Shown here piece after piece: positions 12,657-21,600 of a DNA stretch of 64,000 nt. The notes under the pieces are model-generated. The model saw nothing but the letters and a program-made list of their open reading frames with translations. It made no database searches and was not told the DNA's origin. The translations under genes and the position numbers were made by a program. The stretch spans positions 3,410,001 to 3,474,000 of the forward strand of contig OZ281498.1 of NCBI GenBank assembly GCA_965637545.1. The letters are read 5' to 3'. This DNA is from Phallusia mammillata. Its lineage: Eukaryota. The first letter of the stretch is position 1, and each line of letters opens with the position of its first letter.

Positions 12657-15600
12657 GCAAATAAACCAGCTTGCACAACAACAAGCTCAAAATGCACACA
12701 CAACCTATGGCTCAACACAGCAATTTCAACAACAGCAAAATGTTGCCCAGCAATCCATGAAACAGACCATCACAGTTGTAAGTGTGTTTTTGTAATATTA
12801 CAACCGCTTGCTATTTTATTGCAGTGAATTATTAATTTTTCCTGGAACTCACAGTTTCAAGTGCATATTCAACTGGCAACATGAGGTTTATTATTATTAC
12901 AGTCCCACTAACTGTACTTAACGCCTTGGTATTTTGGCCATGTTGCCTTATTGGTCATAAATATTTGATGTTGTGGAGGCAACAGCCATGTTCAAATTCT
13001 TACCACCATGGCATTTTAGTTTATGTGTTCAAAACATATCAAAAACATGCATTTAATTACATGTTAAGCCATAGTAAAGATGTTTAGGTGGTGTTGGCGT
13101 AAAGAATGTGCTTGACTAACACCAGCAATCTTGTTATTGTGCAGCCAAGCAACACCCCGCATGTTCGCTACGTTCAACCGTGGCCGACCAATGCGTACAC
13201 CCAAATTCCGTATTATCAGGTAGACACAGGCTGGCACATTGCTTTCATTGTTTTCTTTACCTACTTTTAAGTTGGCTTGATACCGTTACCATTGTCAAAC
13301 TGCTTAAGTTGTGAAAACTTTAAGCACTTAAGTCCCAAGTTTTCATTGACCTGTAATAACCCTTTGAAATGTCCAATTAGGAACCAGCGTTTGTTACTTT
13401 TTATTGCCGTTTAAAAAACGCTATTTTAGGCAGCACATTTCTGCAAGCGTTTTAGTTTGGTCTGGTTGCAAATGTAATCACGTTTAATAATCACGTTAAC
13501 GTCATCACAGAGAATGATTTGACGCGACCCTCAATTATATGTCATTTACAGCGGACGTCCTAACTACGCAAAAACCTAATTGCACTGTCCCTGTGTCAAT
13601 TGTAGCAGGAACTTTTGCGAAGGATTGTGGTAAAAACGGCAATAAACCGGACGTTTTGTTTTACTCCTAAAACGTCGAGTGTAACAATATATATAGTTTT
13701 GGGTATCGGTGTTGACCCTACATTGTCTGGCCATTTATCCTTAACTGCAAGAAAAAAAGAAAACGAGATCAACAACCGCAAAAATTTCATTAGGTCTCAT
13801 TTTGAGCGTCTTGAAATCAATATGTCGATATGAATTGTTATCTGACTGTTTAGAAAAGCATCATAAACACATAGTATGCTAAAAGGAAGTGTGACCATCC
13901 AGTTTGGCTATTACACAAATAAAGTTTGTATTGTAATCATCAGTATTTTGTGTCATCTTTTTGTAGCAACCTGGATATGAATCACAGGCCCGTACAGATG
14001 AGATGCCCACTGAATCATCTACTATGTTTGTCCCATCTGCAAATCAAGGCAAGTGGAATTGACAAGTTGACGTGGTCTATCTTCGCAATAATGACGGTGT
14101 CTCTGACAACGGCATGACCACTACTATGCAATATTTAAAGATAAACCTATTTGACTCACGTCATATGTAAATTTTATTTTTTTGCAGATGGCCAAACTGT
14201 CAATGAGTTGGATCAAGGCAAAGCAACAAACGACGCTTCAGCTAAGGAAAGTACGGCTGGCGCAGAGAGGTCCAAGAAAGAACATAGGGGCGAAAAAAAG
14301 AGAAAACCTCCTAAAAACAAAGGTCGTCATGACAACAAGTTCCGGGTTTTACTCTTACAGGTAAAAACTGATCCGTCTGATGTGTGGTTCCCAGCAATAA
14401 ACACGTAAACAGACTTTACATGGCTTTCCTAGGCCTGTTGTGTTTGTTTGCATATCACACGCGTACAGTATACATCTGCTACATGACCTCTTTGACACTG
14501 ATAGTTCATGTTGGTCGTGTTCATCATTTTGCCTTGGTATACACACTTCAAAACCGAATTGTAAAGTTTTATCGAACACAATCTTTGTGTTGGTTCGTGC
14601 AGGGCGCTGTCTGTGTTGCTAAGGTTTTTTGTTGTTGCCTTTTCAGGTCGAAGGAGTGGACAAAAAAACGAAACATGAAACCGAAAGTTTGTCGGGCGAA
14701 GGGAAAGAACTTGAGGCCGAGATTGGTTCCAAGCCTGTCCCAGCAGAGGAGGAAGCTACAACTGACGAAACAGTTCCTGGTGAATCCCAACACTTGTGTA
14801 TTGAGTGTCAGATTGAAGTACAAGGAAACGTAAGTGCCTCCACCGGCCGTGTTCCTGCCCAACACAATAAAACATACGTTTTCATTTATGTCCGAACACA
14901 AAACAGTGGCATATGCCAACTCTTAAACCGTCTTAAATACGAGCAATAAAGATGCTTTCGATTTAACGTATTTGCAAAACGTTTTCCGTAGGAGTTTTGT
15001 CGCTTAAGTATCTTTGCTACCAGCAGTGACAAAGAACGGTGTAATAAATGCAAAAATTTGTAATAAATGGTACCTAACTAGTGGGGGAATATGTTTAATT
15101 TATAGAGGACCGGATAAATTGCATACCGTTCCAACGGACCTCAAAAACTTTGTTTTTCCTTAAATGAATGGATCGTTTAGCAAATTTTGGCGTCGTAATA
15201 TGATTAGGTGTTGAAAACAAATACCAATATATCAAAGTTTTCTCATTCAACGTGCAGTTATTTGTGTTTAAAAATTCAATACAAAAATTTAAAGTGGGTC
15301 TAAATATCCAGCGGTCCCCTTTTATACACCTTCCGAAGTGAACATAACAACGAAATATAAGCTATCTCAAACTTTGTGGCAAATTTCAAGTCCTGTTTTA
15401 AAACTTCAAAAATAAACTACCTGTGTCCCCCTATGAATAGTCAGACAATACTTGGCCACTGGTGATGAGTGCTGTGGTTGTTTGTAGTAGGGACACTTGA
15501 TGCTAGTTTAAATACTACGCTGCTTTATTACTAGCCTTTAACGGATTGTTAATGGCTAAGCTGATCGCATGCTCAAAAATAGTTCAAATAAACGAACAAA

Positions 15601-18600
15601 TTTTGTGAACAGAAATGAGACCTCCTGTTTAATTGCAAACTAAACACCAGTAATTTAACATTGTTCAATGCACTTGTTAATATAATGGGTATCTTTTGGA
15701 TTTTTTCGTGTACTTGGGTGGGGTATTGGCGTTTTGGTCATCCCAAATTTGCAAACACCTAAATATTGAAATACCACTAAACAATCTATACTTTTTTATG
15801 CTTTTATAAATACGTTAAACAATTCAGGATGTACTGCCAAATTTTACAAAAACTGTCATATGCAATATTTCAAAAAGAAACGAATTTAAAGCACTTTAGT
15901 TTGAAACCAAGGATTGAAAAAAAAACTTAGGTCAGCCTTTTCAGCATGTGAAGGCTTCATATTTTTTGGTTTTCAGCTGGAGGGCATTTTCAAAATCGAT
16001 GTAAACACGGAAACAGCAAACGAAACAGCGGTAAGATTGATCGACTCCGAAAAACTAACTGAGGGCAACAAAGAAATTTTTGTAGAGCAGCTGAATGGGA
16101 TTTGCAATAGGGTAGGTGCTATTATTGATTACGTTAACTTTGCGCAATATTTTCTGCACAAGACCAACTCCAGCAACATTAGTGCAGCGAAATGCACGAA
16201 CCTTGCTTGTGAATGTGATTAAAGGCCGATTACAGGGCCGTGTTAAAGCGGAGAACCTGTAAATTGGGGTTAAATGGTTTACAATGTTGATTGTTAGATT
16301 TCAAGCATTTACTTAATGGACATAGTAATCTATATTTGGAAACAAAATCAACTCACTCAAAAACTCCAGCTGTTTTGAAATCCGAGCCACTTTCTCTTTT
16401 GAAAATGTTGCCTCAACGTTAAAACAATAGTTCCTATTATATACAGCTATGTGTAGTCGACACCCAATCCCATACACTAATGTAAAGTCATTCCGAAAGG
16501 TCATCATTGATACACACTGGGTATATTGGCTCGCCGTTGTCACTGGGGTACAGCCTCCATTATACGTTTAACACACTTGTGCAGTAGGTTGAGTGACGAT
16601 AGCTGAAAGAAGGTTCTAATCACATAGTCAGCTATACTACTAGTTGTAGGGACAGCAACACGCTAATGGTGTCCACTGTGTAGCCTCGTAATGTTACCAG
16701 TCCTGTTTTAAAGGCCCTGATTTCTAGTTGAATGGAGGTGGTTAGTATGAAGTGTTGTGAATTTTCTCAGGTGCGCAAGGGTGAATTTGATGGAAAACCG
16801 CGGCTGACCATTGTCAAGTTGAACCGCATCGAGGAAAATCAAGTTGAAGTTGAATGTCAACTTACCACCTACAACTTGAAGACTGTTACGTTCAAGGTAT
16901 TCTGCTTTATATTACCATCTCTTGCTTGTTTGGAATAAATGTTTGGAAATTTTTTTCGCACTTGAATAAATGGCAGAAGTAACGTTCCAAAAAATCTAAA
17001 CAAAAGCTTCGATGCACATATCTAATTTTTGTTTTTGCTAAACTGCTACTTTAGCAGAAAAGTTTATATTTTTGACCCCTTTCGTGGAGCTAGGAATTAT
17101 GCTGCTTTTGTCTTGCAACCAGTGCAGCATGTTCGAAACATATGTCATCCAATTTTCAATTGCACAGTAAACTAGGAAGTAGATACCACAAAGACAGGGA
17201 ATGCATTGTTTTACTACTTATTTTCTGTCGCACAGACTAACATGTATTTCCTTGTTAAAGCCTTTTTAACCCCTACTATTTGTGTCTACAGTTTATTATA
17301 GACGAAGACACTCCCTCTGAGATTGCGGACAGCATGAACCAAGCGAACTATCTTAAGGAAAAGCACATGGAGGTTTTTAAAGAGGAAATCAGATTAGTCG
17401 TTATCAAAGCGAAGGAACTAATAGTTGCCGGTGTTGTCGACATCGACAAACTCAAGCAGGAAGTCTCCTCCTCCGAAACTCTTCTTCCCCTTAACGACTC
17501 CGCATCCACGACGTCTCTTCCCCAACCGGAGGGCGCCAAAGAGCAGGATAGCGCTGCAATTCCTGCTCGACTTGAGGAGATGGGAAGTGAAGTGGATTCA
17601 GTTCTTGGTTCTCCGCGTGTTAACCAAACTGGGGACATCACTGCCGAACAGCAGCTGGACTCAGCCATCAGTTCGCCAACCTCCAACTTAAATGGAAAAA
17701 ACGGTGACGAGGAAGTTACACACATCCCAAGTGACGTCAAACCCACCAGCAGCGCACAAAGTGCCACGGCAATCGCTACCAGCATCGCAGGTTACGCTCT
17801 CCATCGCTCGCCAAGTGGATCAAGCGTCGCCAGCATCGGCAGTGTCGGTAGCGCGGCGAGCTCGACAGCGGCGATGATGCCACAGAACAAGCAGGTGGTG
17901 TCAGGTGGCAGTGTCACTTCAATGGGAAGCACGAAGAGTCAGAATACATACGGCAAGGAAGCCGACACCATGGTGACTAATACGTTTAGCGGTCAGAAAC
18001 CAGCGAACCATGTTCAGGGTGCTCCTTACTCTGCTACACACCCGCCTGCAGGAGTCAGCACTCAGTTGTCACAACCGGTTTCACGAGACCCGTTGCTTCA
18101 CACAGAAAGTGTGGAGATTAGTGAAGATCAGGCCAAGGCCCCGTACAACCCGACCGATACTGTTACAAGTCTTGGTGATTTGGAGACTGGCAGCGAAAGT
18201 GGCGGTCATACCAGCAGCGCGGCATCAGACTTGTCAAAAGGTTTGCCTCAACCTGGAGAGCAAAATCCCGCTGAAAACCAGCCCGCGAACACATCTATGA
18301 CAACTCCTGTAGCCGTCCTTTCGATGGCCCAACCTGTGGTTTTGCCGCAAGCAAATGTTGCTCCCCATAAAGAAAAGCCGAAAGTAATGAACACGAACGA
18401 TTTGGATAAGCAGCTGACAAGGATATTGTCGCATGCTCAGACCGGTTTCTCGCCGACCGAAGTTGGAGTTGTGCCGATTTTGATTCCCGTGGCCGTTCCA
18501 ACAACCGGTGGTCAGCTGACTTCCGACAGCCAATCACCGTTTCCCATTCAAGACATTGACCCCTTGTCAGTCATTACCAAGCTCACCGGGTCGAAAAGTT

Positions 18601-21600
18601 TGAGCAATATGCCAAGCGATAATCCCGAAAATCAATCACAACCCCCTGTGTTGTCCCCGCCTCCTGCCAACCGCGCTACTTCAGAAAGCGAAGTCTTTAA
18701 TAACTCAGTGGTAAAGACCTCCACAGGTACAGCACGTGAAGGTGAATCCACTGAGACCGCCGATATACACACGAGCGCTGCAACAGCCGGTCACGACGTG
18801 GGAAGAATTTCGGACGCTGAGAGTTTGATCGAATCAGTTTCCTCGCAACACTCCGAGCAGACCAAGAAAGAATTACCCGCCGATGAAAGTCACCCAACTA
18901 GTGAGACTCAAGCTCAAGACACCAGCGAACCGTCTCGTTTTAGTCGTTTTCAAGTGACGAAAGTTTCTGACATAAATGCCAATGACGTCAGTGAATCTGT
19001 CGATGACGTAAGCGCTGGAAAACCGGCGGAAAATGCGCAAAGCCCTCCCTTACAGACCTTAGGCAGATTTCAAGTGTTGCCAACTGTTCTACAAACGGAC
19101 GACGAAGACTCACCAACGGACGCAGCATCAACAAGCAGCACTCACCGACAACACAGCTTTGATTCTGACAAACAATCGACGCCTGCGAAGATGCCACCAA
19201 ATTCACAAATCACCAGTGAAGATGCTAACTTTAAGGAAAGCTTCCTCGACACTTCCGAAATATCTGAAAACGCCTTCCCAACGACGACGTTACACCAGCA
19301 GCAACAGCAGCTACAACAACATCAACAACAACAACAATTGCAGCAGCAACAGCAGTATTACGACCGCAACGCATTACAGCCCATATACATTGCTCCCTAT
19401 CCGGAACAAAGTCTCCCGCCCGGCTCTGCCCAACACCAATACAATCAAACTGTGTACGGTTACCCATACTCAAACGGCCCAATGTACCACGATCAGCGAA
19501 TCGACAACCTGCCCTATGGTCAGTCCCTGCCCCTTCCCCTTCACTTTGCGCAGCAACCTCCCAGACAGATGCCGCCCAACGTGCTGCCCACCGGTGACAT
19601 CACGAACAAGGAGAGCCAGTCAGAGACAAGCCTCCTGATGCAAACGGGTGCAGCGCTACGCCAGCGGACGTACAGCAATAATAGTGAGAAGAGCATGTCA
19701 TCATTTGTGGGTGTGTGCCATTTTTTTCGCGAAAACCGCAACTCGGTTTTAAACCAAGAGCTCATTCACTTTACCACGCTTATGGAAGCACAGGTTTTAA
19801 CATGGTTTATCGTAATTTTCAGGTTCCGACCACGGACTTCCGCAAGACGTACCAACCGACTTGTCTTTACCCAAATCCGCTGTAAGTTTCATTAATCTTT
19901 TTTTAGTCGCGTAAACGAGGTTGCATTTTTTGAAGCAGAACATAATACGTGTAAAATAACATAGTCTTTTTGCACTTTTGCAATACTTTGAAACATCCAC
20001 ATGTTTTAATGGTGTGTTTATGACGTCACAGGCACGTGACGCGATGACGCGACATACGTCAACAAGCAGCAAACATTCAAGGTTCGGTGACGATCGGAGG
20101 TCGAAGCTTGTACTTGATTCTCCCACCCCTTCACAACACGGTGATCTGAGCGAAGACGAAACGGATGGAGACGGAATGGAAGAAGATGATATCGATTTCA
20201 AGGACCTGATGAAACGGTAAAATTGTGAATTATGTAATATTGGTTAAACCAACATGCTGGCTGGCAGTTGTAGATCTTTAAACAAATTTGATTCTGCGTT
20301 TTGTGTATAAGTAGGAGATTTTTATAAACATTTGATAGGCGGTAAGCTCAGTTTATCAAATTGTACGAATGACTAAACTAAATGAAAGATTTGCAAAGCG
20401 AAATTGTAAACCTTCCAATAACATTCATATTCTGCTTAATAAGCATGAGGCAGCAACTATTCTTAATTAAATCGCATCATGATGCTGTAATATGTGCATG
20501 TTGTGCAACATATTGTCAAACATGTTACAAAAATAAATTTGAATCTCCCAGCAACATAGCATATAGAAAACTCCGTTAACCTAAACAACCTTTTCCGCAG
20601 CCACCAACGGGAGATTGAGGCGTTGATCCGCAAACACAGACAGCAGCTGGATAAGTTGCGCAAGACCAAGAAACGGCAACGCGTCAAGCAGCAAGCGCAA
20701 AAACAACAACAACAACAATTGCAGCAGCAACAAGCCGCCGCGGCAGCTAACGCTTTTCAAGTTCCCGGGCCTAATAACGGTATGGCTCCCATCGAGCAAC
20801 AGCAGCTACCTTCCCAGTCAACAACGAACTTTGCAGAGAGTGGGAATGGTCGGGCAATGATGGAAGGCATGGTTAATGCTTCAACGTCCCACGTGAGTTT
20901 AATGACCCCGACTGATGCAGACGTTACGTGTTATTTGCAGACCGCGAGCGTCCTTCAGTGAGTGTAACAAACACGCCATAAGGAGCTCGGTTTGCAGACT
21001 ATTAATGCAGTACAGTTACTGAGAGCTCTGCACCAAACGCTCTCAAAAGATATATAGTTGATATATGCAAAAATTTAAACCATACCTATTTCAAACTAGT
21101 ACAAGTAAAAGCTTATGAAACTTTCAAATGACAGATGAAAACTTGCATTTAAATTTGTTATCGCGTGTAAAAATGTAAAACATTGCAAAAAATTCAACAC
21201 AGCTTCCTGTGTAAAATAGTCAGGCATTTTTTGACCGGTATAAAATTTTACACACTTGCTTGTTACTTTAAAATGATATTAATGACAATATCCGCTTACA
21301 TAAACCCGGAAATAATTAGAAATTTCACGAAGCTGAATCACCAACTATGTGCTGGTGCAGAGCACGCCGTACAGACACGCCCACCACTTCCGAATGCCAC
21401 GCCCCCTTTGCAACGTTGCCAACCAACTCGTGATTGGTGGCTAATTTTCAGTCATTACGTAAAACACGATACATTTCCATTAAACTCTATTTTTTTGCAA
21501 AATTTAATGTTTTCGACGGCGTCTTGTTAAGAATCATGTAACATAGTGGTTTCCAACCTGTTTTGACGAATTCCTCCCTTAACAACCCAAAACATTTTAA

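What the first reader, a model, noticed from the sequence alone, without database searches (positions are those of the whole stretch)
14320..17410. WNK carries a tandem extra CCT-like (PF2) domain: three instead of the usual two
Seen: exons 16771-16896 plus 17292 onward encode a standard CCTL2 ([59 protein letters not shown]). Directly upstream, exons 14188-14360, 14647-14829 and 15977-16111 encode a second copy ([14 protein letters not shown]-[~45 aa acidic insert][57 protein letters not shown]). It aligns residue-for-residue with the recalled human WNK1 CCTL2 pattern (RHEK..RPKLRILNV, VECQLE, FKFDL, EIATIMV, ESFVDQV). Established: vertebrate WNKs have two CCT-like domains, and CCT folds bind RFx[V/I] peptides in the WNK-SPAK/OSR1-TSC22D-NRBP network. 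Inference: a lineage-specific duplication adds another docking module, with an acidic loop insert that could alter specificity or auto-docking to the protein's own RFQV motifs.
Basis: partly seen in the sequence, partly recalled or inferred. Interest (0 to 1): 0.8.

Follow-up and report, generated by a model that had tools for sequence, protein, structure and literature searches.

The report
WNK kinase with doubled CCTL2 domain
This (probably sea-squirt) WNK kinase gene carries, and transcribes, an extra and much-changed copy of its second docking domain (CCTL2) directly in front of the normal one, giving three CCT-like domains instead of two; two related species have it too, so it is a real lineage variant, but its function is unknown.

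Summary

- **Copy B** (16771-16896 plus 17292-17420) is a canonical WNK CCTL2. It scores 73.6 bits against a CCTL2 profile built without it.
- **Copy A** (14337-14360, 14647-14829, 15977-16111) is a divergent CCTL2 paralogue.
  - Pfam PF24889 gives 24.2 bits on its last exon alone.
  - Profile-profile probability is 97% against the CCTL2 family and 2.7% against CCTL1.
  - A copy-A profile has CCTL2 as its best site in 188 of 190 other WNKs.
- **The insert.** A 47-residue acidic stretch sits in the β1-β2 hairpin loop of copy A.
- **Conservation.** Two other species, known only from metagenome contigs, have the same five exons with the same intron positions. Copy A core is 43-62% identical among them, the insert 12-24% and copy B 74-81%.
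- **Distribution.** About 150 vertebrate rows, 32 molluscs and a nemertean have one CCTL2. The brachiopod Lingula has an independent, non-adjacent second copy.
- **Binding pocket.** Copy A keeps three of the six OSR1 peptide-pocket positions and replaces the L473 equivalent with Lys or Asp, so canonical RFxV binding is doubtful.
- **Not done.** No structure prediction, because the spliced sequence has no reference. Named tunicates, amphioxus and echinoderms were not reached.

The parts
3047..3337 (+). Exon with the end of the WNK kinase domain and CCTL1 (the autoinhibitory, PF2-like domain). This is the first of the three CCT-like domains.
   Evidence: PF12202 scores 44.2 bits at 3191-3331. 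The exon is 75% identical to the relative's exon P0001.
14292..14336 (+). Basic leader in front of copy A, in exon 14188-14360.
   Evidence: 56-71% identical among the three species. The exon is joined in transcript contigs.
14337..14360 (+). Copy A, first beta strand, at the end of exon 14188-14360.
   Evidence: With the insert removed in silico it aligns to the first strand of the CCTL2 family (hhalign 97.2%, 66 columns). Kept in both relatives.
14650..14790 (+). Acidic, Ser/Thr-rich insert of 47 residues in the beta1-beta2 hairpin loop of copy A.
   Evidence: Position follows from the hhalign gap. 14 D/E against 5 K/R. Length is kept (47, 47, 41 residues) but sequence is only 12-24% identical between species.
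14791..14829 (+). Copy A, second beta strand, at the end of exon 14647-14829.
   Evidence: hhalign alignment to the CCTL2 family. The motif is conserved in both relatives.
15977..16111 (+). Copy A, third strand, pocket loop and both helices. This is a whole exon.
   Evidence: PF24889 scores 24.2 bits, E 3.1e-5, profile positions 28-67. 53-56% identical in the relatives. Language-model neighbours are OSR1_C/CCTL clusters.
16771..16896 (+). Copy B (canonical CCTL2), N-terminal half.
   Evidence: PF24889 scores 23 bits, profile positions 2-29. 78-90% identical in the relatives.
17292..17420 (+). Copy B (canonical CCTL2), C-terminal half, at the start of the long exon.
   Evidence: PF24889 scores 28.3 bits, profile positions 30-71. 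Aligns to PDB 5G3Q, WNK1 CCTL2. The spliced copy B scores 73.6 bits on the independent CCTL2 HMM.
18936..19079 (+). Two RFQV motifs, the SPAK/OSR1-type docking motifs, in the disordered tail.
   Evidence: Regex search on the translation. Both are kept in the relative, as RFQV and RFQI.

Best explanation
The single WNK kinase gene of this genome encodes kinase, CCTL1, a polyQ linker, and then two CCTL2-type domains about ten residues apart. Other agents of this scan call the genome a tunicate. The downstream copy (B) is the orthologue of vertebrate CCTL2. The upstream copy (A) comes from an internal duplication that predates the split of at least three related species. Since then copy A has evolved two to three times faster than B. 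It has gained a disordered acidic loop of about 40-47 residues in its first hairpin, and its peptide pocket has been remodelled. It stays under purifying selection and is constitutively spliced in. Inferred, not shown: copy A still has the CCT/PF2 fold. Also inferred: it acts as an extra scaffold or docking surface with changed specificity, or as a structural partner of copy B, within the WNK-SPAK/OSR1-NRBP-TSC22D assembly, rather than as a canonical RFxV reader.
For: - **Splicing:** transcript contigs of four studies join all exons.
- **Homology:** PF24889 hits the last exon of copy A. An independent CCTL2 HMM gives copy A 22.5 bits (i-E 2.9e-7) here and 30.7 bits in the relative. hhalign gives 96.7-97.2% probability and E down to 4.5e-11 against CCTL2, but 2.7% against CCTL1. 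A copy-A HMM has CCTL2 as its best site in 188 of 190 WNKs and hits no other site.
- **Conservation:** the same five exons with identical intron positions occur in L010 and L023. Identity is 43-62% for the copy A core, 12-24% for the insert and 74-81% for copy B.
- **Tree:** the A copies form one clade and the B copies another, with 100/100 and 99/98 support.
- **Copy number:** one WNK/CCTL2 locus in the genome.
- **Pocket mapping:** it follows the six OSR1 residues named in bioRxiv 10.1101/2021.08.19.456998 and the hhalign alignment.
Against: - No structure model of copy A was made.
- The Pfam score of its one detectable exon (24.2 bits) is below the 27-bit family cut-off.
- The tree does not place clade A as sister of the tunicate B clade, because of a long branch, so the age and source of the duplication are open.
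- The runs are only guessed to be RNA, and contigs hide rare isoforms that might skip copy A.
- There is no binding data of any kind.
- The organism's identity as a tunicate rests on other agents' notes and on copy B grouping away from lophotrochozoans.
Confidence: 0.85

Rival explanations
1. Copy A is a working RFxV (or R-Phi) docking domain. It would add a third motif reader to WNK. The acidic loop would tune its specificity, or let it dock on the protein's own RFQV motifs.
For: The equivalents of OSR1 F452, D459 (an acidic residue in all three species) and L468 are kept. Two RFQV motifs lie downstream and are conserved. CCT-like domains are said to share a primary pocket (PMC12413468).
Against: The I450 equivalent is Gly or Ser. 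The L473 equivalent is Lys, Lys and Asp in the three species, and L473A abolishes binding in OSR1 (bioRxiv 10.1101/2021.08.19.456998). The E467 equivalent is Arg or Gln. Even canonical CCTL2 bound TSC22D2/4 independently of their R-Phi motifs (PMC12266122).
Confidence: 0.2
2. Copy A is a decaying relic of a duplication. It would have no function of its own and would be tolerated as part of the disordered scaffold.
For: It evolves much faster than copy B, sits on a long branch, has lost pocket residues and scores below the Pfam cut-off.
Against: Its core is 43-62% identical among species whose flanking insert (12-24%) and tail (about 30-33%) have nearly randomised. Reading frame, intron positions and insert length are kept in three species. 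It is included in all transcript contigs.
Confidence: 0.1
3. There is no real extra domain. The exons would be alternative or mutually exclusive versions of CCTL2, or the match would be chance.
For: Exons 14647-14829, 15977-16111 and 16771-16896 are all multiples of three, so they could be skipped in frame.
Against: Single contigs in four studies carry both copies in series. The statistics exclude chance.
Confidence: 0.03

Closest known systems
Vertebrate WNK1-4 CCTL2 domain (Pfam PF24889; crystal structure PDB 5G3Q)
   Same: Copy B is its orthologue. Copy A aligns to the family over 66 columns at 97% hhalign probability. It lies at the same place in the protein, after kinase, CCTL1 and a disordered linker, and is preceded by a basic stretch.
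   Different: Vertebrate WNKs have one such domain. Copy A is an additional adjacent one, with a 41-47-residue loop insert and changed pocket residues.
WNK CCTL1 / autoinhibitory PF2-like domain (PF12202; PDB 2LRU, 6FBK)
   Same: The same superfamily of fold. This gene also has one, at 3191-3331.
   Different: Copy A is not CCTL1-like. hhalign gives 2.7% probability against the CCTL1 family and 97% against CCTL2.
OSR1/SPAK CCT domain (PDB 2V3S, 7O86), the RFx[V/I] reader
   Same: A homologous strand-loop-helix pocket region. Copy A keeps the F452, D459 and L468 equivalents.
   Different: Copy A lacks the I450 and L473 hydrophobic equivalents and the E467 acidic equivalent. The two C-terminal strands of true CCT domains are absent, as in other CCTL domains.
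Lingula anatina WNK (P0202, RefSeq LOC106172880 isoform X4)
   Same: The only other WNK found here with two CCTL2 domains, so it also has three CCT-like domains.
   Different: Its copies are about 320 residues apart, both score as full domains (58.5 and 71.3 bits) and have no loop insert. Both sit in the lophotrochozoan part of the tree, so this is an independent duplication.

Membership tests
WNK CCTL2 domain (PF24889), copy A | Sequence match to the family profile | tested here: inconclusive
   Pfam could only be run exon by exon. The last exon scores 24.2 bits, E 3e-5, below the 27-bit cut-off for a whole protein. An independent CCTL2 HMM on the spliced protein gives 22.5 bits, i-E 2.9e-7. 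hhalign gives 97% probability, E 4.5e-11. The reciprocal copy-A HMM picks CCTL2 in 188 of 190 WNKs.
WNK CCTL2 domain (PF24889), copy A | [quoted passage not shown] | tested here: met
   Kinase exons at 1717-2700 and CCTL1 at 3191-3331 are on the same strand. Transcript contigs continue from 12667 through both copies.
WNK CCTL2 domain (PF24889), copy A | CCT/PF2 fold (beta sheet packed on two helices, as in PDB 5G3Q) | not tested
The fold is inferred from profile homology only.
CCT-type RFx[V/I] readers (OSR1/SPAK CCT), copy A | Six primary-pocket residues: OSR1 I450, F452, D459, E467, L468, L473 | tested here: not met
   Mapped through the hhalign alignment, copy A reads G/F/E/R/L/K here, S/F/D/Q/L/K in the relative and S/F/E/R/L/D in the third species. 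Three of six are kept. Copy B reads V/F/D/S/M/Y and the vertebrate CCTL2 example reads V/F/D/I/M/F.
CCT-type RFx[V/I] readers (OSR1/SPAK CCT), copy A | Binds RFx[V/I] peptides | not testable with these tools
   Needs purified domain and peptide assays.
WNK CCTL2 domain (PF24889), copy B | Sequence match to the family profile over the whole domain | tested here: met
   The two exons cover profile positions 2-29 (23 bits) and 30-71 (28.3 bits). The spliced domain scores 73.6 bits on the independent HMM. hhalign gives 99.6%.

The most novel reading that the evidence does not exclude
Copy A is a neofunctionalised CCT-like module with a new ligand, not RFxV, or an intramolecular clamp on copy B or the tail. 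It would be gated by its acidic and possibly phosphorylatable loop. That would give this tunicate clade a WNK regulatory input that vertebrates lack, and a natural handle on what CCTL2 domains do.
Probability: 0.2. Interest if true: 0.55.

Novelty: new variant of a known kind. Interest (0 to 1): 0.42.

Why it matters
CCT and CCT-like domains wire the WNK-SPAK/OSR1-NRBP-TSC22D osmosensing complex. The role and ligand of CCTL2 are still open (PMC12266122). Reviews up to October 2026 state that WNKs have two CCT-like domains, and the held full-text library has no paper with the term CCTL3.

A conserved natural WNK with a second CCTL2 whose pocket is remodelled, plus an independent duplication in a brachiopod, shows that this module can be duplicated and retuned. 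Comparing the two copies gives a ready-made contrast for working out which CCTL2 surfaces matter. It does not change the picture of the pathway, and the organisms are not standard models.

Tried and rejected
- A word search with the long exon (residues 1-300) found nothing, so no stored protein gave a reference for the spliced sequence.
- The Lineus CCTL2 region returned only Lineus isoforms.
- A profile of a Lineus scaffold plus tunicate kinase exons returned molluscs, Lingula and vertebrates, but no tunicate, amphioxus or echinoderm.
- A first version of that alignment misplaced the CCTL rows and was discarded.
- The JGI metagenome scan with copy B exon 1 found only the same relative.
- A PDB phmmer search with copy A's last exon alone gave only chance hits.
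- Two papers, Taylor and Cobb 2022 and Villa 2007, are not held.
- **Structure prediction and fold search** were left out. The domain is split over three exons whose introns carry stops, so it has no reference, and long letters must not be typed.
Full report
**The gene.** The window is G000:C5:3410001-3474000 of a 240-Mb eukaryotic assembly. A WNK kinase gene runs on the + strand.
- An N-terminal exon lies near 600-1369, and kinase exons lie at about 1717-2700.
- An exon at 3047-3337 ends the kinase domain and holds CCTL1 (PF12202, 44.2 bits).
- A 9-kb intron follows, then a polyQ exon from 12466, then the exons of this finding.
- A long disordered exon follows with two RFQV motifs (18945-18956 and 19065-19076), then coiled-coil exons near 20600.
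- Genome-wide scans with PF12202 and PF24889 find no second WNK.

**Observation.** The five exons (14188-14360, 14647-14829, 15977-16111, 16771-16896, 17292 onward) have canonical acceptors and donors and read in one frame.
- Fifteen runs hold about a fifth of the sampled words of the stretch, which fits exon-only coverage by the exons.
- I laid the contigs of four of these runs, from four studies, on 12400-18300. Each contig covers only the exons.
- The contigs join 12777|13967, 14048|14188 (a GC-AG intron), 14360|14647, 14829|15977, 16111|16771 and 16896|17292.
- Both domain copies therefore sit in series on the same assembled transcripts.
- Caveats: the runs are only guessed to be RNA, and contigs cannot exclude minor isoforms.

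**What the copies are.**
- Exon by exon, Pfam PF24889 (WNK CCTL2) matches 16771-16896 (profile positions 2-29, 23 bits), 17292 onward (30-71, 28.3 bits) and 15977-16111 (28-67, 24.2 bits, E 3e-5).
- I spliced the protein in a script and built a CCTL2 HMM from 73 CCTL2 domains of other WNKs, without this gene. Copy B scores 73.6 bits and copy A 22.5 bits (i-E 2.9e-7). In the relative, copy A scores 30.7 bits.
- A against B gives a local score of 68, against a shuffle mean of 26 (sd 4.8), and 0 of 2000 shuffles reach it.
- A profile of copy A aligned to the CCTL2 family gives 96.7% probability, E 3e-10, over 56 columns. Against the CCTL1 family it gives 2.7%.
- With the insert cut out in silico, the alignment extends to 66 columns and includes the first strand (97.2%, E 4.5e-11). 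The gap falls exactly in the β1-β2 hairpin loop.
- A copy-A HMM from three species has CCTL2 as its best site in 188 of 190 other WNKs, and no significant hit falls anywhere else. Vertebrate and lophotrochozoan WNKs therefore hold no cryptic copy A.
- Language-model neighbours of copy A's last exon are OSR1_C/CCTL clusters. This counts as a lead only.
- PDB 5G3Q is the solved WNK1 CCTL2, and copy B's C-terminal half aligns to it.

**Relatives.** The only close matches to the CCTL1 exon were exon-sized ORFs on unannotated contigs. I walked along those contigs.
- Species 2 is ena:ERZ27241785:k141_12251, also present in JGI samples (loci L004, L009, L010). It has all five exons with the same splice positions.
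- Species 3 is ena:ERZ25067576:ctg10482 (loci L016 to L023). It has them too.
- Identity among the three species:

| Region | Identity |
|---|---|
| Basic leader | 56-71% |
| Copy A core | 43-62% |
| Insert (47, 47 and 41 residues; always net acidic and Ser/Thr-rich) | 12-24% |
| Copy B | 74-81% |

- The disordered tail is about 30-33% identical between this genome and species 2.
- This pattern fits purifying selection on copy A's core and a free-running loop.
- In a small tree the three A copies form one clade (100/100) on a long branch. The three B copies form another (99/98), which sits with the vertebrate sequences, apart from a lophotrochozoan group (93/89).
- Where clade A attaches is unresolved.

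**Distribution.**
- In 71 long WNK representatives each protein has CCTL1 plus exactly one CCTL2. The ones I looked up were all vertebrates apart from Lineus and Potamilus.
- In 120 further rows (32 molluscs, Lingula, Lineus isoforms, many vertebrate WNK1) the same holds, with one exception.
- The exception is Lingula anatina WNK. It has two full CCTL2 domains at about 1097-1172 and 1490-1559 (Pfam 167.6 bits in total), 37% identical over 182 residues. This is a separate, non-adjacent duplication.
- No named tunicate, amphioxus, echinoderm, arthropod, nematode or cnidarian WNK was reached. The depth of the duplication within tunicates is unknown.
- That the genome is a tunicate comes from other agents' notes. 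I only partly checked it, through the tree.

**Mechanism.**
- The six OSR1 residues that hold RFQV are I450, F452, D459, E467, L468 and L473, and L473A abolishes binding (bioRxiv 10.1101/2021.08.19.456998).
- Through the hhalign alignment these positions read as follows:

| Domain | I450 | F452 | D459 | E467 | L468 | L473 |
|---|---|---|---|---|---|---|
| Vertebrate CCTL2 (example) | V | F | D | I | M | F |
| Copy B | V | F | D | S | M | Y |
| Copy A, this genome | G | F | E | R | L | K |
| Copy A, species 2 | S | F | D | Q | L | K |
| Copy A, species 3 | S | F | E | R | L | D |

- Copy A thus keeps the Phe, the acidic loop residue and one hydrophobic position. It loses two hydrophobic wall residues in all three species.
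- I therefore think a canonical RFxV reader is unlikely (about 0.2).
- More likely is a conserved CCT-fold module with changed specificity, or a structural role beside copy B.
- The ligand of canonical CCTL2 is itself unsettled. In PMC12266122 CCTL2 was unoccupied in the AF3 model, and its binding to TSC22D2/4 was independent of their R-Phi motifs.

**Literature.** Papers and reviews up to October 2026 describe two CCT-like domains per WNK. The term CCTL3 occurs in no held paper. The Drosophila domain study mentions only CCTL1.

**Verdict.** The interpretation of an extra tandem CCTL2 is supported. "Lineage-specific" is supported as clade-specific, with unknown depth. The docking or auto-docking function is unsupported. 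The feature is a new variant of a known kind and of moderate interest.

**Left out.** Structure prediction was not run, because the spliced sequence has no reference.

Noticed in passing
P0202 (Lingula anatina WNK), residues about 1097-1172 and 1490-1559: This brachiopod WNK has two full CCTL2 domains about 320 residues apart, 37% identical over 182 residues. It is an independent internal duplication, apparently undescribed.
   Followed up: partly
window 14049-14187: A GC-AG intron with the donor AAG|GCAAGT. The transcript contigs of all four studies use it.
   Followed up: partly
window about 3338-12465; L009 364-11888; contig ERZ25067576:ctg10482 about 243672-265275: The large intron right after the CCTL1 exon is large in all three species, at about 9.1, 11.5 and 21.6 kb. 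Another note of this scan suggests internal promoters there. I did not test that.
   Followed up: no
window 18936-19079: Two RFQV motifs about 40 residues apart in the disordered tail. Both are conserved in the relative, as RFQV and RFQI.
   Followed up: partly
window 12611-12666: A polyQ-coding CAG/CAA repeat. The read tool skipped it as a repeat, and contigs break there, so its length may vary between individuals.
   Followed up: no
window 17570, 17738, 17855, 18077: Single-base differences between the assembly and transcript contigs of different studies, most likely alleles. 17855 G>C appears in three of the four runs.
   Followed up: no
L005, L016, L017 against window 2223-2483: One kinase exon is 96-97% identical to species 3 and 4 but only 78% to species 2. 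The CCTL1 exon shows the reverse, at 57% against 75%. Either the rates are uneven or the relationships among these species are not simple.
   Followed up: no
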